DNA of 64,000 nt, taken from the NCBI GenBank assembly GCA_904063045.1, contig CAJFCJ010000018.1, positions 496,001 to 560,000 on the forward strand, read 5' to 3'. Made by a program: the position numbers and the translations under genes. The DNA comes from Dimorphilus gyrociliatus. Lineage: Eukaryota > Animalia > Annelida. This document shows, piece after piece, positions 14,222 to 30,184 of this stretch. The first letter of the stretch is position 1. Each line of letters opens with the position of its first letter. Under the pieces are notes generated by a model, which saw nothing but the letters and a program-made list of their open reading frames with translations, was not told the DNA's origin and made no database searches.

Positions 14222-16254
14222 ATGGTTACTCGCTATATCCCTCAAATTCTGGCCCTAGGAGTTGCTCTTGTTATTGTGAAGCTCTATGGACCGTCTTTCA
14301 ATCGCGAAGCAACTACCATAGAGGATATCAAGGAATATTACGATTATATCATCGGTTAATCAAATATGATAAATATATTTTATTTGTATTTTTAAAATGT
14401 TTTTTTTCTAAAGTTGGTGGTGGAACATCCGGAGCGGTTCTTGCAAGTAGGATAACTGAAGATGAAGACAAAAAGGTTCTTTTAATCGAAGCAGGAGAGG
14501 ATCAAGCACAAAATCCGGATGTAAACATTCCAATAATGGGAGAAAAAGTAAGGGGTTCAGAATTGGACTGGAATTATGAAACTATACCTCAGAAATATGC
14601 TTGCAAATCACACATCAATAGAGTAAGACAGGTTTTAATAGTGTCTTAATAACGCTATATAAAAATATTTAAGGTTGCATTGTGGCATTGCGGCAAAGGA
14701 TTAGGAGGAACTTCGAACATAAACTATATGCAGTATCACAGGGGCTCGAGACATGATTATGATTTATGGGCTGCTCAAGGAGCTACTGGTTGGTCTTTCA
14801 AAGACGTTCTGCCCTATTTTATTAAATCGGAAGATAATCGTAATGGCGATTACGTCAGAACGGTTTTCCACGGCTTTGGTGGGCGGTTAACAGTGCAAGA
14901 TACAATTCTTTCACCAGTGACACAAATTATGACCCTAGCTTTTAAAGAATTAGGGATTGAAAAAAAAGATATTAATGGAAAGAGTCATTTTGGTTATGCA
15001 CATAGCCAGGCAACAATTCGGAATGGAATTCGTTGGTCGACTGACAAAGCATTTTTAAAGAGAGCAATGTTTAAAGATAATTTAGATGTCATAACTGGAG
15101 CATTTGTCACTAAAATTTTAATCGAAAATAAAAAAGCAACTGGAGTTTCGTTTCGGCACAACGGAAAACAGAGGAAAGTACGTGCCAAGAAAGAAGTCAT
15201 TGTCAGTGCTGGGACGATTGGATCTGCGAAACTTCTCCTTCTATCGGGAATCGGACCCAGAAAACACCTAGAAGCCCTTAAAATACCTGTCATTGCGGAT
15301 CTTCCTGTTGGCGAAAATTTGCAAGATCAAGTTCAAACAGATGCTATAGAATTCTTTACTAGACATCATGTTTCAATTACAGCCGCACGATCAGAAAATT
15401 TCTTGTCTTCGTGGGCTTACACTCTTTTCGGTACAGGAATGAAAATGAGTCCAAGATTTCGAGAAGGAACTGCTTTTATTAAGGTTAGGCAACAACCTCC
15501 TCATATTCGTTATCCATTAATAGCTTTGCAAGTAATAGCGAATGTTGCAACTTATAGTTCTGAACAACTTAATATAGATTCAGACACTTGGGGTGCTATG
15601 CATGATGATCTTCCCAGTAAAGAAGGATTCAGTATTTATCCAATTCTTTTACATCCAAGGAGTAGAGGAACAGTTAAGCTAAGGAGTACTAATCCCGAAG
15701 ATCCTCCTCTGATTAATCCTAATTACTTAGCTGATGATGCAGATGTAAAAATCCTAGTAGAAGCGATACAATTTGTCCGTTCAAAATTGGCAGATACTAA
15801 AGTATTAAAAGATTGGGACTTTCAGTTAAGCGACAAAATTCTTCCTGATTGCTCGGAACATGGCAATTTCACCAACCAGTATTGGGAATGCTTCGTGAGG
15901 CATATAACATTATCAGGTGCTTCTCCAGTGGGAACTTGTAAAGTAGGCGCAATTGGGGATCCCACAGCTGTTGTCGATCCTCTCTTGAGAGTCAGAGGTA
16001 TAAAGGGGCTCAGAGTAATTGATGCTTCGATAATACCAAAGTCAGTCAGTGGCAATACGTATGCCACACAAGTTATGCTTGCTGAGAGGGCTTCCGATTT
16101 GATCAGAGAAAAAGACACCGTGAAAAAAATTAAGGATTATTTTAAACATCTTATTTCTGTCAAACATGAGAAATTTAAGGATGAAGACAGTGAAAACATT
16201 GATAGTAAAGCTGCAAAAGAAAAAAAGAAGGGAGAGAAATCAAAAAACAAATGA
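14222..16254 (+). CDS. GMC (glucose-methanol-choline) oxidoreductase-like protein with N-terminal signal anchor
   Basis: ATG 14222 MVTRYIPQILALGVALVIVKLYG; YDYIIVGGGTSG..VLLIEAG (FAD Rossmann motif), GKGLGGTSNIN, SAGTIGSAKLLLLSGIGP, VGENLQD, GLRVIDASIIP. Three coding exons, the last about 1.58 kb. Confidence 0.93.
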
Positions 16255-16360: not shown

Positions 16361-17466
16361 GTAGATGGCGCTACACATCCCCTTTTAAGTGACTATGGAT
16401 TATCTAACCATAATCCCTTAAAATGAACTATGTATTCAATGAACAATGCAGTTACCCTTTCCTTCCACTGACAAGCAAAAATTTACCAAACAACCTGTAA
16501 TCTGAAATATATTTTAAGTAACAGTTATTTAAAATAGAAAATTCATTCTTATGAATAGCAAGCTCAAACGCAGATTTTTTAAATCTAATTTTTTTTGTTT
16601 TCAAAGAAATGAACGCAAAGAATTTTAAAAAAAGATGTTATGTGAACATATAGACCAAATGAATTATTCTACAACTCGGTACTTCTTAGGAATATTTTTG
16701 TATTCGGTTTATCCAAAAATAATCTACACAACATCAACAAAACAATGCTTTAATATAAAACATTTGGAGCCAACATATACACCATTCGCGTGTGACCCTT
16801 TTTTCTTCTGATTCATTAGTATAGCTAAAACAGTGCGATAAAGACAATTTTCGAAATCGCTAGAAAAGTTAAATCTATCAAAATTCACATTCTAATATGT
16901 CAACAAAAAAGTATGCAATATTCATAATAGTTATATATTTCTCAATAGATGGCGCTATAATAAAAAACAAATATATATTCTTCTATTGGCTTGATTATGC
17001 TAAATAAAAAAATAACACACAATTTATAAAGCAAACTATCATTTTACATCATTTACAATGTGTCTTTGCATTGAAAAACTAAATGAATAAATAAAAGCAA
17101 ATATACATTTATAGTGTAAAAATAAATAACCATATGTACATGAAAGAGGAAAAATTATAAACATTCATAAATTAATCTAAATAGGTGAATATATGATCAT
17201 AATTTTTTCTCCTATTTATTCACTCAGCAGCTTGCTTAGTTCTCTTCGTTTTTATCAATAGGAAGACGTCGTTTTACGTCCGTCATTAAATTGCTCTAAC
17301 GGAACGCATACATGATGAATATTGCAGAGTATATGGAAATAGAATCACAGCAAATTGGTGTGAACACTTAACTAAAAGATTTGACATTTAAAATTATTAA
17401 GTAACGTAGACAAATAGTAAAATTAGACATTTGAATAACAGTTCAGCATATCGTTAGATGGCGCTA
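16361..17466 (+). promoter_or_regulatory. Three direct copies of TAGATGGCGCTA (CTCF-like core)
   Basis: Identical 12-mers at 16362-16373, 16946-16957 and 17455-17466, between the convergent GMC and zinc-finger genes. Confidence 0.6.
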
Positions 17467-17725
17467 GGCACTATTATATATCTATTTTTCCAAGTAAATG
17501 CCTCTCTTTTAAATCATAATGTTGTAGACTCCGTCACAAGTGTGTGCCAGAGAGATCTATATTGACCTTGGATGTTTTAGACTTCAGTGTCCCGTTCCCA
17601 GAGCTTTTCAATCAATAACAACCGTACAGTCATCAAAATATATCCCTAAGCGCCCCATTGACAAACAGGATATGAATCGGTAGCCAATGCAGCTACATAT
17701 TATAGACCTATAAACCTATGCTTTT

Positions 17726-18517
17726 TCAAAATCTGGACGATGAAAGGACGTCTTCTAAGAGACGGTCAACTTGGTCCGTGTCATGTTTTAAAGTCCTTTC
17801 TAAATTCAAATCAGGCGTTAAAACCGAAAGCATTCGAACAACATTTTTCCGTAAAAATTTGAGACGTCTTGCATGTTCACAATCAGTTTCTGAATGTGTG
17901 GACATTAGATCTACACCCTTACTCCCAGGAAACTGGTCTGTGGAAAGAAACGGTGGTGTTAAAAGTGATCCTAGTCCGCCAAAAAATTTTGGTTCAACCA
18001 GAGACGGGTTCGGAAAAAAAGTTGGTGGTGGTAACAAGGATATAGGAGGTGGGATGGGAGGAGTTCGCCTTGTTATTTTTAAAACATCCGTTCTTTTATC
18101 CAAATTATAATAAATCATTTGGGCTCCATGTCTTGACCGAATGTGAGATTTCAGCAGATGACCCTGTGTATATCGCATTCCACAGGCCCCACACCAATAA
18201 GGGCGTTCGCCTGTATGAGTTCTTCTATGAACAGCTAAGTTTGACTGGTGTCTTGTTGCATATGCGCAATCATCGCATTTATATACTTTCGGAGGAGTTA
18301 TCTCTGACGATGTTGTTTCGGCTTCAGGATTTTCAGAGGTATCGTCTTCCATAATCGGAATTGGTGATGGTGAAACTCCTTCTCCATTTAACCACACACA
18401 TGGAAAGGTTCTTGGGGTAACATCGTCGTCATCTTCAGCTGTTTTGTCTTTTAATCTTGCAATTGTATCTAATAATTTCAAGGGCTGTGAGTCACTTTGT
18501 TTAGCAGCCAGAATCAT
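17726..18517 (-). CDS. C2H2 zinc-finger protein (two fingers, TGERPY linker) with a Pro-rich linker and a MORC3-like C-terminal helical segment
   Basis: Single 263-aa coding exon: CDDCAYATRHQSNLAVHRRTH-TGERPY-WCGACGMRYTQGHLLKSHIRSRH. All three frames after the upstream acceptor (about 18537) hit stops, so ATG 18517 is the start. Confidence 0.88.
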   Translation of the reverse strand: MILAAKQSDSQPLKLLDTIARLKDKTAEDDDDVTPRTFPCVWLNGEGVSPSPIPIMEDDTSENPEAETTSSEITPPKVYKCDDCAYATRHQSNLAVHRRTHTGERPYWCGACGMRYTQGHLLKSHIRSRHGAQMIYYNLDKRTDVLKITRRTPPIPPPISLLPPPTFFPNPSLVEPKFFGGLGSLLTPPFLSTDQFPGSKGVDLMSTHSETDCEHARRLKFLRKNVVRMLSVLTPDLNLERTLKHDTDQVDRLLEDVLSSSRF

Positions 18518-18802
18518 TTTAACTTCTTTTAATCACTAGAATGTAAAAAACAAATTGATTTTTAACTTAGCTTTAGAATTACAAAGTCACATAAATGATC
18601 TGCAATTACAACTTCATTCGCGATCCAAATATTTTACTGGAAGTGAGATCATATATTCATGTGAGAGCAATGTCACTTGCAATTGACTATGAAATACTAT
18701 TTTATCCGGAACGTACGATATGGAATATTCACACAATAAAAACGCATATACTGAATGCGCCATAACATATTATATATGTGCAGAAATATATAAATATATA
18801 TA

Positions 18803-18805
<3 letters not shown>

Positions 18806-18842
<37 letters not shown>

Positions 18843-21828
18843 TATATACAGCATAGATAAATATGATGTGTTTGGATAATATATTTGTACATAATGGCTA
18901 TTTTTATCTGTTATACCTGTGTCTTTCTTGCTCATTACGCTGCGTAGAATGTACAAGCGAACGCATGATAAACAGCATGCTGGCATATATATTTATAGTA
19001 CATAGTATGCCATATATACAATACAGTAAAACAGTTATAAATAGTTTATACTGATTTTTCTATTTGGTCCTAAGTTAAGCTGAAACAACTTTAGTATTCG
19101 ACCAACGATATACTATTACTATTATAAGTAAAATGGAAAACGCAATAGTCTATAACAGATTAATTAAGATTGCACAACTGAGATGGTAGCTTATCAAAAC
19201 AGTTCTAATTTTGTCTCTAACCCTATTTGTAGCTTGAAAAATCTCAGTTGTGCTAGATTTACTATATGAACTTAAAACTTTCGATGAGCACAATAGCGAC
19301 AGGAGATGATTTTGGCATTATTTTCTTGGTCACGTGGTAATGCGTTAGTCGCCATTTTAACGTCATGAACTCAACGAATCGAAAGTTCACTTATCCATAA
19401 ATTATTCACAGTACAGTTATAGAATTGAGCTATATAAGCTTATTGCAAATAATCCCAAACGTATATATACATCATATATATTCAGCATACACTGAGGAGG
19501 TCGCTCTTAAAATATGCACTAGGCGTTTCATATGTACGAATAAAAGCTATTTTTCTAATAATTGTAACGTTTCCTTGTATTCAAAGGCTAATCATTGTAT
19601 GGTATAAAAAGCCATGTACTTTTAAAATAATATTTCTATCCAACAGTGTAGGAGTTTAATCTTTGATACTGAGAGAGAGAGACTTTCACCTTAATCTTCG
19701 TAAAAATCTCATAGACGATACTTAAATTTTAAAATTTAACACTTTCTCACAGCACCTGCTATGAATAACGTTGCAGTTGATGCGGAACGGGATCGTAACA
19801 ACCAATCACAGTCAAACACAACTGAACAATGCAGTCTTTGTTATGCATTGATCCTTTCAAACGCACCGCATTAGTCAATCAGTCATGTACACATACTTTG
19901 TTTATTACGTCAACAACTTTTCAAGTCGAGCTGCACACACACATACAATATATATATATATATATATATATATTTATGCAAAATGATATCGGAAATATTT
20001 AAATGTATTGGAGCTTTGCATATTACATACTTAATAATAATGCATGTTTACTAAAAACAAAATATGAGGCTAAAGATCTATTTAAATATACGCCTAATTA
20101 AAAAAAACAATCAAAGTGATATAATAATTATAATTATTGAATTATCAAAATTGAAAGGTAAAATAGTCGACAAGGAGCAATCCAAATTAAATGCGTGATA
20201 GGATAACTTTTTGAAAAAATCATTGTCGTGCAAAATTCTTAAAGACAAAATAAAGAAGCCAATTAAGAAGCAAAAACTAGTCTTACATTATTTTAATTAC
20301 CAAAATTTGCTTTTCAGTCGTGCTTTACGAAAAAGTAAATTTTTTTAACCAATTTGAAAATTCGAGATTAAAGTTGCAGAATAATTTAGAAAACAGTACA
20401 AAATTTTTCCAGCTATAGTTAACTAAAAATCTTTTAAAAGTAAAAAAAAAACTCATTGTTCTTTTGCTTAAATCGTATAGAGTCATGTTGGATATATTAA
20501 TATATATATATATTAAGTTTGGTAAATATTCCTTAACCACTAGCTTGATAAAAAACTATAATGTCATGGAAGAATGACAAAGATTCTCGTGCTCTTGCTA
20601 AATTGTTTAATTTTATAAACCTGATTTTCTGATTTACTTTAATTAGTTGAAAGAAATTTCGTTCAGTGATGCAGAAAATGGAATTTACATCAAAATAGAA
20701 ACTTTCATTTGTAATTTGCTTGAATTCATTTCGTTTATTATTTTTATCACTTGATATAAATTTTGTGATAAATGCATAAGTTCAAAACTACATAAATAAA
20801 AGGTTCTAGATATTTTAACTTGAGTAAGTAAATTATTAGACTATTGAATAGCTCACTTCAATTGACAGTTTTTGAAAGGAAATAAGTGAACTTTTCGAGA
20901 AATTGATTATTCGGCGACTTTGTGAATAAATTGTTCTTATTTCCTACGATTGCATGAGCTTAATCTGTTCAATTGAATTATCATCATAATGCCCCAAGCG
21001 CGTGTATTGCAGTTTTGTTCTTATATTTTACTTTCATTTGCAGTTGCACGCCATCGTTTATTATTTATTGCCTTTACATATGAATATCTATATTTATATA
21101 ATACCAGACGCGTGTAATGTAAATATATATGCATACGTTCGTTTCCGATTGCATATATATATATATATACATATATTTATAAATATATACTGCATATACA
21201 TAGCCTATAAATGAATAATTTTCATTCTAATTTTATATACAATTATAAATACATAATTAGAAGTGTCAGTTGTACATTTCCTCAAACTATCAAATATATA
21301 TATATATATTTAATATATTTATTTTCGAAAGCAACTAAAGCAGCCAGCATGTAGCCAACAATAATTGCTTCAACTAGTCTTTCTAATGATCTACATTTAC
21401 GTACCCTTGTGCTCTGCAAAGCACCAGATCTTGCATCAACAATAAAACAAATAAATAAATAATAAATTATTATATGCAGGACACATTCTAAAATACTTAT
21501 ATATTTACTGTGCATATACTGTCTCTATTTAGCTCTATATGTGCGCGTAACTTGTAATATATAAAAGAATGCACACACAATGCTGCAATATATACTAAAT
21601 CATGTATATAATTATCGGAAAATCGACGGCTTATCGGCACATAAAGGGAAAGGCGTTCAACAATACCCTGCTAATAAAATTATTCATGGAAATCCATATA
21701 CATTACAGTTATTGCAGTCGGTGATATTATAAACAGATGCGCATGTAGGAAATGATTCATTTCAGCCATATGGCTGTATAATACATACTTACATGCGCTC
21801 TATATATAAATATACAATAGATAAATCT

Positions 21829-21874
<46 letters not shown>

Positions 21875-22033
21875 GCATGAGTTATATGTATTTATATAAT
21901 ATCCTTTTTCAATATTTATAAATATAAAAACTTAATAATTTTACACGCTTTTTTTATCACATTATTTATAACTCAAAATGAAATGAAATACATACAAACA
22001 TACTTAACAAAAAATATTTATAGAGAAAAATGT

Positions 22034-22074
<41 letters not shown>

Positions 22075-22343
22075 AATATATTCTTATTTATATAATAATT
22101 GTTATATTTATTCATTCATATATTTATATTTATATATATTATTTATATTGTATACTGCATACATATACAGTGTATATTTAGATATGAATTATGCAAATAT
22201 TTGTGATTTGACGTTTCCTGCACTAATGTGTATTTGATATACATTCCACTTATCGTACAGACAGAAATTCGCGACATGTAAAATCGTATGGTGAAATTTT
22301 GAACTATGTGATATAAAATTGGATCTAATACATAATATATCAT

Positions 22344-22393
<50 letters not shown>

Positions 22394-23310
22394 ATAGCAT
22401 ATATAAATTATATATATACGAGCAATATACAGTACATAAATCTATATAAATATAAGACTTATATATACATGCATATATATATATATATATATATATTTAC
22501 AGATACGCATTCACCATGAATCACACGCCCTAAACAAAGAACTGGGCGTTTTTTTATTTTCACATATATAAATATAGAACGCTTATATTTATATAAACGG
22601 AAGGTGAAAATCAATGCTTAGCAGTAGGATCGAATAATTTAATTGCGAAACGAATTGAGTAAAGTGTATTATTGTTTGGGATTGTTATCATGCAAAATAC
22701 ATATATGGACGCGTGTTTTTTCTGACTGTTACACGAGTGTAGAATAAACAGAGTATAGAATCAACATGAAGAACTGTTTACAAATGAGTATAGTTTTTGA
22801 TAGAGCGTGTTGAGTTTTCACATTCGTGTTTATATACTGCCAAAGATGCTGGTTAGAGATTACCAGCACGAATAACGCTTTATAGAATATATATGTATAC
22901 ATATGCTATTTATATACTTTCTGGTTGGCATTCAGATGCACTTGCTTTAGCGAATGTTCAAAAGTTTTTCGAAAGTCAATTGAAACATTCACATTGTACA
23001 TACATAATGATGTATCATAACTTTCAATGAATGAAAATAAAATTGCAACGTTATTTGACATCTTTGTAATAAGATAACGATTAATCAACTTTGAATTGTG
23101 TACAGGTTTGTTACAAGAAAATCGTATTAGCCTCTCGCGCCAATATCTCAATTCATAATCAGCCCGACAAAACGCTATTATATATTATGCACAATCGTAA
23201 AAAGTATCAAATAAGGTAATCAAACGAAAAAGCTGCATGATTAATGTCTATTGCAGATTGAATCGATACTCCTATATATATAGTATATATATATATATAT
23301 ATATATATAA
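18806..23310. repeat. Cluster of (TA)n microsatellites
   Basis: Runs at about 18806-18838, 19948-19975, 21834-21871, 22036-22071, 22347-22389, 22473-22495 and 23271-23310; the only comparable run elsewhere is about 6578-6598. Confidence 0.9.
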
Positions 23311-25227
23311 GTATAAATACTTTTTTATTGCTTGATTTTTGTATTCACCATTTATAAGCGAAATTTGACTACATACTGTATATATTTGCCGCGATGCTAA
23401 GCTTTAAACTAATATTGACGAATTCTGCGTCTTAACTCGTGACACGCACGCGTTGTGATGGCAAAGCACACATTTTTTCTTTCACTCCATTTTTACATAT
23501 ATGTATTCTATACATATCATGTATGCGCATGGATGTTCGAGGTATGATAATTCACCAGCTAGGTTCGTCTATTGCTTAATGTATAATGTAAGTTGCTGGT
23601 TAATTTAGGTAAATGGAACATAAGAAAAAAAGCTGGTAAAATCTCCCTGTTAAAGTTTTAGCAGTGTTAAACGTTTAAAAAGGGAACTGTTCAAGAAAAT
23701 CAATACTGTTTAACACCGGCAAAGATGTACACTCGCTTGCACGCATATTATACAACATGACGCTTAATTACGTGTAATCATAAGAAAAAACCCTCTGGAG
23801 TAAATCTAATTAGAGAGAACAAAGAAGAAATTGGAAATTAACAAATGCTAAAATGCATTCTTATTTATTGATTTAATTATATAGGACTATATTTCTACGT
23901 CTGCATGGAAAATTTCGTTTCTAATATTAACGTAGCTCATGCATTACAAATCGCATTTACAATGCATATCCAAAGCTCATTAATCTATTAATAATCGCTT
24001 TTTATACTTATATAAATCCAAATTTACATGCTTTTTTCCAACGTCACGCAAATGCTATATTACATTATATTAACTCCATCCAGACGGTCTGCTCGCTTAT
24101 TTCTTCAAGAGTTCTGGACAGTTTTATGACTATGTATCAATATATCTAGGCCTTTACCTTTAATTATAAAGGTCTTGAATCGTTTAATTACCCTAATTAA
24201 ATCATTCCACCTGCTCTACACTTACCAGACATTTATAAAAGTTTTAAAAATTTCGAAATTAACAGTTAATAACTTTCCTACAGAGTGTTGAAAAAGGAGT
24301 TTTTTGTACGATTTGTAAAACAAAGAAAATTATCCTTGATTGCCTTTATATGCGTCATAATATTATTGTTCGAATAAGTATATTTAAAAACAAGAACCAA
24401 TGAATTTGCAAGTCCATTAATTTACTCATTAAAGTGCCGAAAAAGTACATTGAAATCAATACAATTTAAAAAAATTATATCAAACCTTAACGGTCCCATT
24501 GCTAAGCTTTTGATTTCCAAATTCTCAAGAATTCGAAGATTCGACTGCATCGCTAGCGCTCAATCCGCCATAAGAAACAAATCCCAAAATGCAGTTTTAG
24601 TCGGGTTTTGATTCGAACTCGAAATACATTTATCGGTTAGAGTTGGGATTAATGAACCGTACAACAATTTAGATGCTCTTTTGATGCTGAAAATTTACAT
24701 GTATATTATATGTATGTATCATATTTATTTGATAAAATCTACGGCGATAGCAAAGACATTGTGAGATATCTATATTTTTGACCCCTATTGAATTCTCTTG
24801 GCGTATCATAACTTCAAACTTCAAAAACACAAAAAAGGCTTAGGGTCACGTAATCCCAACTTTAGCCCCTAACTTTTAAAGAATATTAATGGTTGAAATG
24901 CAATTTGCTTTGTTTTCGGCTGGAATCTCCAAAACTCAACTACCACAAATAAATGACCTTTTTGCTCATTTAACCGTGTGGGGTCTTTATATACTTCCCC
25001 AGAGTAGTATTTTTTTTCTATAAACCAAAAATCACTTTAAAACTAAAATATTAGTGAAAAACCGGTAGTCATTTCAAATTATATTTATACTACAGGTGGC
25101 GTTCATAAAAAGGTTTATTGACGATATCCACAACATAAGAACGAGATTTACAACATTAAACAGTCGAATTATCGTCCACTATTTTTAAGTGTTTTATTTC
25201 TATCCGTGAAGTAGTAGCAGCAGGAAT

Positions 25228-27402
25228 ATGCCTGAAATTGAAATTGAAAGAATAATTTCAGTATCAAGTGAAGATCAAGTAAGATATACATTTTTCAAAC
25301 ATAAAAAAAAATTATGATGTATATTGCACCGAACAGAAATTTCCCGCAAAAAATCTCCTACGAAAAGACGGCTCTAAATGGCAAAATCAGTGCGGGAAAA
25401 AGGCAAGCATAATCTTCAAGGTTTGTTCAAGTAGTTCATATGTATGTTATACCATTTATACTGCGAAACTGCAGCTGAAAGAGGAGTCTTTAATCACTTC
25501 AATTCACATTGGAAACAATGGTTCTGCCTTCGTAGAAGTATTGGTTGGAAAGTCGTCGTCCACTGAAGATAACAAAGTACAAAAATTTCTATTTACTGAT
25601 TCCAAATCATTGATAATTTTTATAGGTTATATTAGTTGCATCATCTTTCATGAGTCCTGTAGAGAGCAGATCAATGGATAATTCTCATAGAGTTAGGTTA
25701 TTTAATACAGATAATCTTTGCAAGACAGTCATTGACGAAAAGTGGGATAAGATTGAAGTTGTTTGTACTCAACCTTTTAATAAAGTTCGATTATTCTATT
25801 GGCATTTCTTCAATTTTTTTGTCATGAAATCTAATTCTTTCAGACAACTCCTTACGGATTGTCATTTATAAAATTTTTCTCTGAAGAACTTCCTGTCCCT
25901 CAGGTAGGTTATATTTTTAATATAATATAAATCTAAGTAAATATTTTTAAAAAATACCAATTAAACACGTTATATTAATCGGTATTTGGTTTATTTCCTC
26001 AAGCAAACGACTTTGGGATCTTTTAAATTATTATCAGATGACAATAGACAAAGCAGCTTTCGTCCTGGATCATTGTTTGCTAAGAGAAAGGAAAAACCTC
26101 TTTCCCCTCCACTCTCAGCAGCAGCTGAAGCACGTGATATTTCCCGGCATATTGAAGGATGTGACCATCAAACTGTGCCATCTAAGGTACGAATTTGCCA
26201 TTCTTTCAGTCCCTGTGTATATAAAATTATCGCTTTACAGCAAGAAAGAAATACTATTAAAGAAAAAACTTCGAGAGTCTTCGAACCAAAGCAAAAAACC
26301 ACACTTGATCAGGGAAACAAAACACACAAGACTTTAGGAAGTAAAAAACATTCCTGATTTGATATATTTTAATATAATACAAAACCTTTATTAGGAAATA
26401 GCAATAAAAAAGAAAGATCCTTTGGTCAGCTAATGGAAAAAGTAACATTTGTTCTGAGTGGTTTTCAAAATCCATTTAGAAGTAAAATTAGGCAACAGGC
26501 CATTGAGATGGGAGCTACTTATAAAGCAGATTGGTCCGCTAACTGCACACATTTAATGTTATTTATATCCCAAATGGAGTCAAGCAAATAATAATTTTAT
26601 AATTCACGTTTTAGATGTGCATTTAAAGACACACCAAAGTACAACTCAGTTCTTGGAAAAGGAAAAATTGTGAAGCATCACTGGATAGAAGACTGCTTTA
26701 AACAAAAAAAATTATTATCTTCGAAAAAATATCGTCTTGATTCAAGTAAAAGTGACAGTTCAGAGTCGGAAGATGATATACCATATAAAAAGAGAAAGCA
26801 ACAACCTGGTATAATAAGTAGACCCGAGACATCAAAACAGGCTGATAAAAGAGATTATCCTTCTGGTACAGTGCTTGCTTTTTGATATTTTTCATTCAAT
26901 GTAAGAAGTTTAGAATTAATTGAAATTTTTTTCAGACTTCTCATCTTCACTTGAAACAGATCAACCGAAGAGAAGAAGGTAGGTTAAAATTAAACGAAAA
27001 ACACTGCTTTAATTCTGCTGTTCATTAGCCAAACGAAGTTAACACAAAAAAATGATAGTACATCATCTGTCTTAAAAAATTTCTTTGAAGGAACTATATT
27101 TTTCATTCATGGAGATTTTCCTGAAACTGAAAGACAGCAAACGGAGAGATATATCATTGCTGCCGGCGGGTACGTTATTTTACAAACTTATTTAAAATTT
27201 AGCTTAAGTTTTCTATAGTGAAATTGAAGATCAAATATCAAGAAATACTGAATTTGTAGTCACAATGAATGAATATCGCAGAAACTTTGACGAAACAGCT
27301 AAAGGAAACTTAACAAATTTGAAGTTTATTAAACCACAATGGATTTTTGAATGTCATGACTCTGGGAAAAAAGTTGAATATCGAAAATTTGAAGTTAAAT
27401 GA
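25228..27402 (+). CDS. XRCC1: DNA repair protein XRCC1
   Basis: NTD MPEIEIERIISVSSED..IHIGNNGSAFVEVLVG..RVRLF..VVCTQPFNK..YGLSFI; BRCT1 VTFVLSGFQNPFRSKIR..THLICAF..HHWIEDC; BRCT2 YIIAAGG..FIKPQWIFECH; stop TGA 27400-27402. Confidence 0.95.
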
Positions 27403-28244: not shown

Positions 28245-30184
28245 TCTGTGGATAAAAAAAATTACGAAGAAAGCCTTTAATTTATAAAAAAATTACCATG
28301 TATTGTCTTGTGTCTCAGTATTTTTCTCAGCATGTGTCTTCGAATGTTTTGCCAAGTGATCACTTCTCGTAAACTTCTTTTGGCAGACGTTACACTGAAA
28401 CTTTTTTTCCCCAGTATGAGTCCTTTTGTGTCTTTGTAGCTCGTCAGAACGGGTAAATTTTTTCTGACAATAGGCCCAATCGCATTCAAATGGTCTATCA
28501 TCATTGTGCCATCGCAAGTGAGCTCGTAAATGGGACGTTTTACCATAGACCTTATTGCATCCTGGCATATGACAGATATGTTCCTTTTTCTTAAGATTTT
28601 TATTTTTGCTGTCAGTTCCTTTGCAATTAGGACAAGTGCATGCTATCCTCTTCGGTCTTTTTTGCTCTCCTGTTGATTGAAGAATACTTTCTGCAGGAAC
28701 AACTGAAACTTTCGTATGATCATTTGGGTCCATCTGGACTTGAGCAATGACAGCAGACGCAGTACCATTTGTGCCATTCACAAGTTGAAAACTATCGTTA
28801 TTGGCATATTGCAACTGTATAACGTTGTTTGAAATGTTGGATGCAGAAGATTTTGGTAATTGCATAATGGTCGTTGGTGTTGTTGAACCAGTTATGGCAT
28901 TGTTGGGTTGGATTTCTGTTGGTGCTTTAACCTCATTCTTTGATGTCTCTTCAGTCTTTATCATCTCAGTTTGAGCTTGATTTAAAACTGTAATCTGTTG
29001 TTGAGGACTTTGCATACCATTTTGAACAATTATACCTTGCATACTAGGAGCTGCTGTGACAAATTGCTGAACAGCTGGAACTTGCACTGCTTGTTGGGCC
29101 ATTTGAACAGGTACATGAACAGTTTGAAAAACTGTTTGACCATTGGCATTTGTAACAGGGATTTGTACGACAGCTGAAAGTGTCGTAGGTAGTGTTTGTT
29201 GAGGAAAAACAGATCTTTGAACTACCATTTGTCCATTTTGAGCTAACAGAACTTGGTTGGGACTCACAGTATTTTGGATGATTTGAGGTGAATTATTGCG
29301 TACCAGCACAGGAATTACCTGATTATTTTGTATGACATACTGCTGAGAAGTGTCTTCAGCTGGAACATTCATAATATTCTGGAAGGGCTAAAATTAAATG
29401 TATTAAAAATTATTTCATTTTACAAATTTTAAACAATAGCATAGAAAGCGCGAGGCAAGCTTTTTTAAATTAATTATAATTTTTTCGTTAGAATGTAATA
29501 GCAAGTGTTTAGACAAAGCTGAGATAAGAAATGTTATATCTCTCTTAAGAGCACAACTTGCCTTGCTGTTCCTCGAAATATTGTTGTTATCGTTTACCTG
29601 AAGCATATTTACTACAGGTTGTTGGGGCTGGTTAATAACTTGAATTCCGTTAAGTTGCTGCACCTGCTGTCCAGTTTGTAAAACGGTCTGGAATAGCAAC
29701 TGTGCTATAATAACGTATTAAAATCAAATAAGATGAGGCACCTGGTTTATAGCTTGTGGAGGAAGTGTTTGCTGAATTTTTCCTGAAGAGTCGAATGCTA
29801 CAGCCATCAAATTTCCTTGAGCCGTTTGTATATAGCCGTACTGCTGCTGTTGTCCATCTTCACTATTTCCGTTGCCACCTATTTTGCTGCATGTTGCAGC
29901 CAACATTGCCAGAGGCGATGGCTGTGCTGTATCCTGAAAAATAAAGGTGATTTACGCAAATTCTCTTTCCAGTTTCAACCAAGTTTCTGTTACGTAATTT
30001 AAATTATGCCATGTCCTTGACCGTGGGCACGTCCGGGAGGAGATAGGGCGGGGTTACATCGATATGGGAGGCGATTCTTCAAAATGGCGGCGTTTTTGAA
30101 AATAAAACCAAATCAGCTTACCTGTGCGCTTCCTGTTGGAGCTATATATCCGTCGTTCTCCTTTTGAGTTTCGTTCGAACTCAT
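28245..30184 (-). CDS. Sp1-4 group transcription factor
   Basis: Exon 1 30184-30122 [21 protein letters not shown]; Sp box [16 protein letters not shown]; Gln-rich region; buttonhead box IACTCPNC; three fingers ending RSDELQRH and RSDHLAKH. The stop is either TAA at 28295-28293 or a TG|A codon made by splicing. Confidence 0.95.

What the first reader, a model, noticed from the sequence alone, without database searches (positions are those of the whole stretch)
17726..18270. C2H2 zinc-finger protein carrying a MORC3-like C-terminal module: candidate sequence-specific MORC adaptor
The C-terminus reads RRLKFLRKNVVRMLSVLTPDLNLERTLKHDTDQVDRLLEDVL. From memory, human MORC3 ends [40 protein letters not shown]. 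The shared pattern is L-LR-NV--L----PDL-L-----D-D-VD--L--V, and it sits at the extreme C-terminus in both proteins. MORC C-terminal helices mediate oligomerisation. This 263-aa protein has no GHKL ATPase or CW domain, only two DNA-binding fingers and a Pro-rich linker. Inference: it co-assembles with MORC and targets it to specific DNA, much as KRAB-ZFPs target KAP1, or it acts as a dominant-negative partner. I know of no description of this architecture.
Basis: partly seen in the sequence, partly recalled or inferred. Interest (0 to 1): 0.8.

Follow-up and report, generated by a model that had tools for sequence, protein, structure and literature searches.

The report
Zinc-finger protein with MORC3-like tail
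This is a real, expressed gene for a small DNA-binding zinc-finger protein of a worm/mollusc family nobody has studied, whose strongly conserved C-terminal helix-loop-helix module has a predicted shape closest to part of the vertebrate chromatin ATPases MORC3 and MORC4, which points to a shared pairing or docking domain.

Summary
Window 17726-18517 (-) encodes a 263-aa protein with two C2H2 fingers, a disordered Pro-rich linker and the quoted tail. It has no GHKL, S5 or CW domain. A spliced transcript contig shows the gene is expressed; its 5,950-nt GT-AG intron lies in the 5' UTR. Constraint is strong: Ka/Ks is 0.027 against a relative, with fingers and tail 100% identical.

It is not an orphan. 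A phmmer search with the tail found 57 clusters, all with C2H2 fingers or no Pfam domain, none MORC. Named members come from molluscs, annelids and an orthonectid, all uncharacterised. Most are longer and have three fingers.

The tail (C213-S261) has eight invariant positions and folds confidently as helix-loop-helix. Three structure searches of the ESM Atlas (7.7 million clusters) each put chordate MORC3 first, and one put MORC4 second. Sequence-level homology to MORC was not shown: no MORC passed E<1e-3, and I could not obtain a genuine MORC3 C-terminus.

Best reading: a conserved sequence-specific factor whose tail is a dimerisation or docking module of the MORC3/4 type. The MORC-adaptor idea remains possible but untested. 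The invariant DNA-contact residues argue against a KRAB-ZFP-like role in targeting transposons. The scan's earlier notes held nothing on this.

The parts
24486..24517 (-). 3' end of an upstream non-coding (5' UTR) exon; the donor GT lies at 24485-24484
   Evidence: The loose end of the X7 transcript contig matches here exactly and nowhere else in the window. The sequence reads ...CCGTTAAG|gtttga. No long ORF lies on this strand.
18536..24485 (-). 5,950-nt GT-AG intron within the 5' UTR
   Evidence: acceptor ...ttctag|TGATTAAAAG. A related organism (run X1) leaves the genome at the same junction.
17726..18517 (-). Complete CDS of 263 codons plus stop, all within the last exon (exon start 18535)
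   Evidence: Stops close all three frames between 18535 and the ATG. Ka/Ks is 0.027 against orthologue P0001.
18383..18412 (-). N-terminal family motif R-x-F-P-C-x-W-x-N-G (residues 36-45)
   Evidence: It aligns with the same motif in four of the nine proteins aligned: its close relative P0001, Capitella P0034, and unnamed relatives P0008 and P0015. Three rows are fragments without this region, and Mytilus P0030 lacks the motif (alignment A2).
18125..18283 (-). Two C2H2 zinc fingers (residues 79-131) joined by a TGERPY linker, predicted to bind DNA
   Evidence: Pfam zf-C2H2_16 and zf-C2H2. PDB finger matches. pLDDT 84-94 in the full-length AF2 model. 100% identical to the relative.
17948..18070 (-). 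Disordered Pro-rich linker (about residues 150-190) holding the short motif PKFFGGLG (family consensus GPRxF..GG)
   Evidence: pLDDT below 55. Motif seen in alignment A2.
17735..17881 (-). C-terminal helix-loop-helix module, residues C213-S261. Invariant positions: C213, L219, L222, R223, L230, P235, L254, V257.
   Evidence: 58-sequence alignment A1. AF2 pLDDT 80.6 with helices 16-35 and 51-63 of the 65-aa model. Top Atlas structure matches are MORC3 and MORC4.
17192..17725 (-). Conserved 3' UTR
   Evidence: 75.7% identical over 531 nt to the relative, although synonymous sites are saturated and the intron does not align. Covered by RNA contigs.

Best explanation
The gene encodes a short member of a conserved family of sequence-specific C2H2 zinc-finger factors found in annelids, molluscs and an orthonectid. 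Only two parts of the protein fold: the two-finger DNA-binding unit and a 49-residue helix-loop-helix module at the extreme C-terminus. A disordered Pro-rich linker carrying short motifs joins them.

I propose that the tail is a self-association or docking domain of the same type as the end of MORC3/MORC4. Two hairpins would pack into a four-helix bundle. That would pair two DNA-binding units, so that a protein reading only about 6 bp per monomer gains specificity and avidity.

Shown: gene structure, expression, constraint, family membership, the fold prediction and the structural resemblance to MORC3/4 models. Inferred: homology to the MORC3/4 end, dimerisation, and any contact with MORC.
For: The gene is real and constrained.

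Only the fingers and the tail are predicted to fold.

The tail is conserved across phyla: eight positions are invariant in 58 sequences. The hydrophobic positions have a/d-like spacing on both helices, which is more than one hairpin needs for its own core.

The tail lies at or close to the C-terminus in most of the 57 hits, the exceptions being gene models that appear to read on past it.

The AF2 model is confident (pLDDT 80.6).

Chordate MORC3 is the top Atlas structure match in three searches with two different family members and two modelling methods, and MORC4 came second in one of them.

Precedent: MORC2's C-terminal CC3 is a constitutive dimer hub (PMC13189624). MORC3 is reported to homodimerise through its coiled-coil region (PMC8627505). 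A C-terminal tag makes MORC3 hypomorphic (PMC13373173).

The weak PDB look-alikes are dimeric hairpins: Rop and bHLH proteins.
Against: No MORC appeared among the phmmer hits at E<1e-3.

A profile search of PDB sequences gave nothing.

The Atlas output does not say which part of MORC3/4 is matched.

TM scores of 0.6-0.7 on about 57 helical residues are weak on their own, and the PDB matches are insignificant (Z below 5).

No oligomer could be modelled here.

The 32-bit score rests on a sequence recalled from memory, which may have been unconsciously bent toward the query.
Confidence: 0.45

Rival explanations
1. The tail pairs heterotypically with the equivalent C-terminal module of the host's MORC3/4-type ATPase. 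The zinc-finger protein would then load or anchor MORC at its DNA motif, or poison MORC dimers as a dominant negative.
For: The same structural evidence as above. MORCs lack sequence specificity and are recruited by partners. From my own knowledge, not checked here, Toxoplasma MORC is recruited by ApiAP2 factors. PMC13373173 notes strong MORC3 sites without H3K4me3, which suggests other recruitment routes. The family survives even in the highly reduced orthonectid Intoshia.
Against: No MORC sequence from this organism, or any other, could be examined, so there is no evidence that spiralian MORCs carry the module. There is no co-occurrence or co-evolution test. Vertebrates appear to keep the module in MORC3/4 without any orthologue of this zinc-finger family, so the module works without such a partner. 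Invariant finger contact residues fit a fixed regulatory motif, not transposon targeting.
Confidence: 0.2
2. The tail is a docking module for a third protein, such as a co-repressor or SUMO/PML-type scaffold, that MORC3/4 also binds through its own copy. The zinc-finger protein and MORC would share a partner without touching each other.
For: Invariant polar residues on helix 1 (R223, N225, R228) and D251 on helix 2 look more like a specific recognition surface than a plain hydrophobic zipper. The family linker carries a CtBP-like P-x-D-L-[ST]-x-K motif, which fits a repressor that collects cofactors.
Against: No candidate partner is known. The conserved polar residues could equally form salt bridges within or between hairpins. 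The CtBP-like motif is degenerate in the window protein (GVDLMS).
Confidence: 0.15
3. The resemblance to MORC3/4 is not homology. The tail would be a family-specific helical hairpin (a homodimeriser, an export signal of the form M-x3-L-x3-L-x-L, or a stability element) that happens to look like a helical stretch in MORC models.
For: No significant sequence match to any MORC. Short helical hairpins match many things at TM 0.5-0.6, as the other rows show. The MORC3 sequence was only remembered.
Against: That is very unlikely for a generic hairpin. The remembered string fits seven of the eight invariant columns.
Confidence: 0.2

Closest known systems
Uncharacterised C2H2 proteins of molluscs, annelids and an orthonectid: Capitella teleta CAPTEDRAFT_187265 (ELU10104.1), Paralvinella palmiformis LSH36_280g03030, Mytilus LOC143082362 / XP_071182061.1, Octopus 'myoneurin-like' XP_029636710.1, Babylonia LOC143286489, and the zinc-finger part of an Intoshia linei model named PRA1
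   Same: Same N-motif (R.FPC.W.NG, though not in Mytilus P0030), near-identical fingers 2-3 with the MEFYNLDK extension, the GPR.F..GG motif, the C..C.H signature and the same C-terminal module at the protein end.
   Different: Most are 550-1270 aa and have a third, upstream finger and a clear P.DL[ST].K motif. The window protein has 263 aa and two fingers, a degenerate GVDLMS, and lacks the acidic residues after the module. None has been studied, and the database names are automatic.
MORC3 / MORC4 (GHKL-ATPase chromatin compactors), C-terminal region
   Same: Best predicted-structure match to the tail in three searches (TM by query 0.59-0.74 over 50-58 residues).
   Different: The window protein has no GHKL ATPase, S5 or CW domain. 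No MORC reached significance by sequence. It is not a MORC.
MORC2 CC3 dimerisation hub (PDB 9KQL)
   Same: A helical C-terminal region of a MORC that forms a constitutive dimer (PMC13189624). It is a functional precedent for what such a tail may do.
   Different: About 100 residues long. It was not matched by the family profile or by the fold searches of the PDB, so it is probably a different module.
Zinc-finger factors with dedicated association domains (BTB-ZF, SCAN-ZF, the Ikaros C-terminal finger pair) and HLH dimerisers
   Same: The logic is the same: a few DNA-reading fingers plus a separate small domain that pairs the protein. The helix-loop-helix shape weakly resembles bHLH and Rop dimers.
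   Different: No sequence or significant structural relationship. The module here is not in Pfam.
KRAB-ZFP / KAP1 and ApiAP2 / MORC recruitment systems
   Same: A DNA-binding protein carrying a small module that brings in a silencing machine.
   Different: KRAB-ZFPs have many fast-evolving fingers and a KRAB box. Here there are two or three fingers with invariant contact residues and no KRAB. Recruitment of MORC is not shown.

Membership tests
C2H2 zinc-finger DNA-binding proteins | Tandem C-x2-C-x12-H-x3-5-H fingers with a TGE[RK]P-type linker | tested here: met
   Two fingers at residues 79-101 and 107-130 with a TGERPY linker. Pfam PF23611 scores 37 bits, above its cutoff, and PF00096 scores 30.2 bits, above its cutoff. 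PDB finger matches. pLDDT 84-94.
MORC family | N-terminal GHKL ATPase (HATPase_c_3) with the S5-fold domain | tested here: not met
   No such Pfam match even at E<=1. The CDS is complete, with closed frames upstream.
[quoted passage not shown]
   No zf-CW match.
MORC3/4-type C-terminal module (not a curated family) | Predicted structure matches the MORC3/4 models better than anything else | tested here: met
   Chordate MORC3 is first, and MORC4 is second. Two family members and two modelling methods were used.
MORC3/4-type C-terminal module (not a curated family) | Statistically significant sequence match to genuine MORC3/4 C-termini | tested here: inconclusive
   Single-sequence phmmer found no MORC at E<1e-3 in 1.84 billion representatives. 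No profile search against MORC sequences was possible. The remembered string scores 32 bits against profile A1, but it is unverified.
MORC3/4-type C-terminal module (not a curated family) | The module sits at the extreme C-terminus in both protein families | tested here: inconclusive
   True for most members of the zinc-finger family. The Atlas output does not give the matched residues in MORC3/4.
Zinc-finger-plus-tail family of molluscs, annelids and an orthonectid (Capitella CAPTEDRAFT_187265 type) | Fingers 2-3 with the MEFYNLDK extension, plus the C-terminal module | tested here: met
   38-48% identity over aligned positions to Capitella, Mytilus and unnamed members in alignment A2, and fingers-to-tail collinearity with Intoshia. 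Tail E-values from 7e-27 down to 2e-4.
Zinc-finger-plus-tail family of molluscs, annelids and an orthonectid (Capitella CAPTEDRAFT_187265 type) | Upstream finger 1 (VCPECHKVFKRKVYLQRHMEREH) | tested here: not met
   Absent from the window protein and its close relative P0001. This is a shortened member.
KRAB-ZFP-like transposon-targeting adaptors | KRAB box and long, fast-evolving finger arrays | tested here: not met
   No KRAB. Only two fingers, identical to the relative and nearly so across phyla.
CtBP-recruiting repressors | P-x-D-L-S-type motif | tested here: inconclusive
   Family consensus is P.DL..K, for example PQDLTTK and PQDLSTK. The window protein has GVDLMS, which does not fit the usual pattern.

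The most novel reading that the evidence does not exclude
The tail is a heterotypic pairing module. Through it, a sequence-specific zinc-finger protein would bring a MORC3/4-type ATPase to a fixed DNA motif, which would be the first DNA-sequence-directed MORC recruiter in animals. The same unrecognised roughly 50-residue module at the end of human MORC3/MORC4 would then be a docking site whose partners are still unknown.
Probability: 0.17. Interest if true: 0.8.

Novelty: new variant of a known kind. Interest (0 to 1): 0.5.

Why it matters
Reviews and primary papers treat the long C-terminal half of MORC3/4 as mostly disordered with 'a coiled coil'. None of the papers I read singles out its last 50 or so residues. 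If that end is a discrete ancient module that also caps a conserved invertebrate transcription-factor family, it gives MORC biologists a defined piece to delete or mutate. It also offers an explanation for why C-terminal tagging of MORC3 is hypomorphic. Finally, it provides a concrete test of whether MORCs can be coupled to sequence-specific DNA binders. For invertebrate genomics, it defines and names the parts of a conserved, unstudied factor family retained even in an orthonectid.

Tried and rejected
Hidden upstream coding exons, for example MORC domains spliced onto this ORF. Rejected: all three frames are closed between the acceptor and the ATG, here and in the relative. The upstream exon found through the transcript contig has no long ORF.

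A second copy of the tail or a MORC gene in the window. The A1 profile against the six-frame translation finds only this ORF.

Word search restricted to the tail. It returned only the close relative and missed family members that share 7-8 five-letter words, so it could not be used to reach MORC proteins. The length window also excludes them.

Profile A1 against all PDB sequences: no hit at E<=10.

Foldseek on the PDB and VIA-align wide: nothing significant, best Z 4.6. MORC2 CC3 (9KQL) did not appear.

Full-text search for three substrings of the remembered MORC3 end: no paper prints them. I read five MORC papers, and none describes the extreme C-terminus as a module.

Divergent tail hits (P0078, P0079) as possible MORC fragments. 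Their loci carry C2H2 exons upstream instead.

Vertebrate or arthropod orthologues of the family. Only generic poly-finger hits covering about 15% of the query appeared.

Full report
**1. What is in the sequence**

Pfam finds two C2H2 fingers (residues 79-101 and 107-130, joined by a TGERPY linker). It finds nothing else, even at E<=1: no GHKL ATPase, no Morc S5 domain, no CW finger. PDB sequence matches are all to the fingers. The window is AT-rich animal DNA, 26-38% G+C. Its neighbours include a GMC oxidoreductase, an Sp-type factor, a Rab and a TRPM-like channel.

**2. Gene model and expression**

A polypyrimidine tract and AG lie just 5' of the ATG, so the exon starts at 18535. All three frames are closed between that point and the ATG. 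The relative's genomic contig has an acceptor and an in-frame stop at the same place.

- In run X7, one contig of 6,961 nt at depth 209 (surrounding pieces have depth 2-6) lies on 16900-18537 and then leaves the genome.
- Its next 30 letters match window 24488-24517 exactly, and nowhere else in the window.
- The sequence there reads ...CCGTTAAG|gtttga.

This defines a canonical GT-AG intron at 18536-24485, with an upstream exon that has no long ORF on this strand. A contig from a related organism (run X1, about 94% identical) breaks at the same junction. Two marine or coral metatranscriptomes hold pieces of the CDS and 3' UTR, 99-100% identical in the coral run and 95-99% in the marine one. 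The gene is therefore transcribed and spliced, and the 263-aa ORF is the complete coding sequence.

**3. Constraint**

The closest relative, P0001 (261 aa, Logan contigs L001 and L002), is 78% identical in DNA over the CDS plus 3' UTR. By the Nei-Gojobori method, Ks is about 2 (saturated), Ka is 0.055 and Ka/Ks is 0.027. The fingers show no non-synonymous difference, and the tail is identical in protein.

**4. It belongs to a family**

A phmmer search with the last 59 residues against 1.84 billion representatives gave 57 proteins at E<1e-3, with the match at or close to the C-terminus in most.

- The ten longest hits (553-1272 aa) are all C2H2 proteins.
- In the set of 50 others scanned (46 remaining hits plus four cluster members), a couple match finger families and the rest match nothing. 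Many are probably last-exon fragments.
- Two divergent hits also sit behind finger exons on their contigs.
- No hit has a MORC domain.

Named members come from these animals:

- Molluscs: Mytilus, Octopus, Argonauta, Elysia, Bulinus and Babylonia.
- Annelids: Capitella and Paralvinella.
- Orthonectid: Intoshia.

Every name is automatic or 'hypothetical'. A search with the Capitella protein found no vertebrate or arthropod orthologue, only generic finger hits covering about 15% of the query.

Alignment A2 shows the family layout:

- an N-terminal motif R.FPC.W.NG (absent from the Mytilus member);
- finger 1, which is missing in the window protein;
- nearly invariant fingers 2-3 with a MEFYNLDK extension;
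- a GPR.F..GG motif;
- a CtBP-like P.DL[ST].K motif, which is degenerate here (GVDLMS);
- a C..C.H signature followed by the tail.

The finger residues at helix positions -1, 2, 3 and 6 (H, S, N, V and Q, H, L, S) are the same in the window protein, Capitella and Intoshia. That fits a factor with one fixed DNA motif.

**5. The tail**

In 58 aligned tails (A1), eight columns are invariant: C213, L219, L222, R223, L230, P235, L254 and V257. Eight more are at least 90% conserved. AF2 with this alignment gives pLDDT 80.6. The model has a 20-residue helix, a short turn around PDLNL, and a 13-residue helix. In the full-length model only the fingers and the tail fold. The hydrophobic positions on both helices outnumber what a single hairpin would bury, which suggests an intermolecular interface. 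This last point is inference.

**6. The MORC question**

Structure searches of the ESM Atlas (7.7 million cluster representatives) gave consistent results:

| Query model | Top matches |
|---|---|
| Atlas model of this protein, residues 205-263 | Chordate 'MORC3-like' cluster first (TM by query 0.74, 58 aligned) |
| My AF2 model | MORC3-like first (0.60, 57 aligned); MORC4 second (0.59, 50 aligned, rmsd 2.0) |
| Atlas model of the Capitella tail, only 42% identical to this tail | A different chordate MORC3 cluster first (0.67, 58 aligned) |

Three limits apply:

- The output does not say which residues of MORC3/4 are matched.
- No MORC reached E<1e-3 by sequence.
- I could not obtain a genuine MORC3/4 C-terminal sequence.

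About 2,000 shuffles (1,950 returned a score) reach at most 11.8 bits. The string matches seven of the eight invariant columns.

**7. Comparison with solved structures and the literature**

Foldseek and VIA-align find nothing significant in the PDB. The weak look-alikes include Rop and several bHLH dimers.

- MORC2's C-terminal CC3 is a crystallographically defined dimer hub, PDB 9KQL (PMC13189624). It was not matched by this module.
- MORC3 is said to homodimerise via its coiled-coil region (PMC8627505).
- MORC3's C-terminal half is otherwise described as largely unstructured (PMC6614601).
- A C-terminal degron tag makes MORC3 hypomorphic, and some strong MORC3 sites lack H3K4me3 (PMC13373173).
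- No paper I read describes the last 50 or so residues as a module.

**8. Reading**

Most likely (0.45), the tail is a self-association or docking domain of the MORC3/4 type. It would dimerise a conserved two-finger factor, probably a repressor given the CtBP-like motif in its relatives.

The rival readings are:

- A shared third partner that both proteins bind (0.15).
- No real homology to MORC (0.2).

**9. Novelty**

This is a new variant of a known kind: a C2H2 factor with a dedicated association domain. The domain itself is unannotated and apparently shared with MORC3/4. The family has not been studied. The scan's earlier notes contain nothing on it.

Noticed in passing
window 17192-17725 (-): The first roughly 530 nt of the 3' UTR are 75.7% identical to the relative, nearly as conserved as the CDS (79.8%). 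Synonymous sites are saturated and the intron does not align. This suggests strong post-transcriptional control elements.
   Followed up: partly
window 14680-16254 (+): A 524-codon open frame for a GMC-type oxidoreductase (glucose dehydrogenase-like) converges on the zinc-finger gene. The X7 contig runs on about 2.7 kb past 16900, so the two 3' ends may overlap or were merged in an unstranded assembly.
   Followed up: no
window 28293-29372 (-): A 359-aa open frame for an Sp/KLF-type factor (Q-rich region followed by three C2H2 fingers, ...[25 protein letters not shown]...) lies upstream on the same strand.
   Followed up: no
window 26433-26591 (+): A short open frame reading like an XRCC1-type BRCT exon (FVLSGFQNPFRSKIRQQAIEMGATYKADW) lies on the opposite strand. 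It falls in the region where the X7 contig's 2,650 nt upstream of the junction would lie if they are collinear with the genome beyond 24517, which was not checked.
   Followed up: no
P0082 (Intoshia linei, 413 aa): The public model named 'PRA1 family protein 1' looks like a fusion of a PRA1 gene with the orthonectid member of this zinc-finger family. Residues 232-402 are collinear with the window protein from finger 1 to the tail.
   Followed up: partly
alignments A2 and A3 (family linker); window residues 201-206: Relatives carry a conserved P-Q-D-L-[ST]-T-K motif resembling the CtBP-binding PxDLS motif. In the window protein it is GVDLMS.
   Followed up: partly
alignment A1, columns before the tail: Many members have C-x2-C-x-H immediately before helix 1, with the last Cys invariant and His in 49 of 58. 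This could be half of a zinc site completed across a dimer or by a partner. The window protein keeps only C213 and H215.
   Followed up: no
window 18786-18851: A (TA)n microsatellite lies in the 5' UTR intron. The reads tool skipped this and several similar repeats.
   Followed up: no
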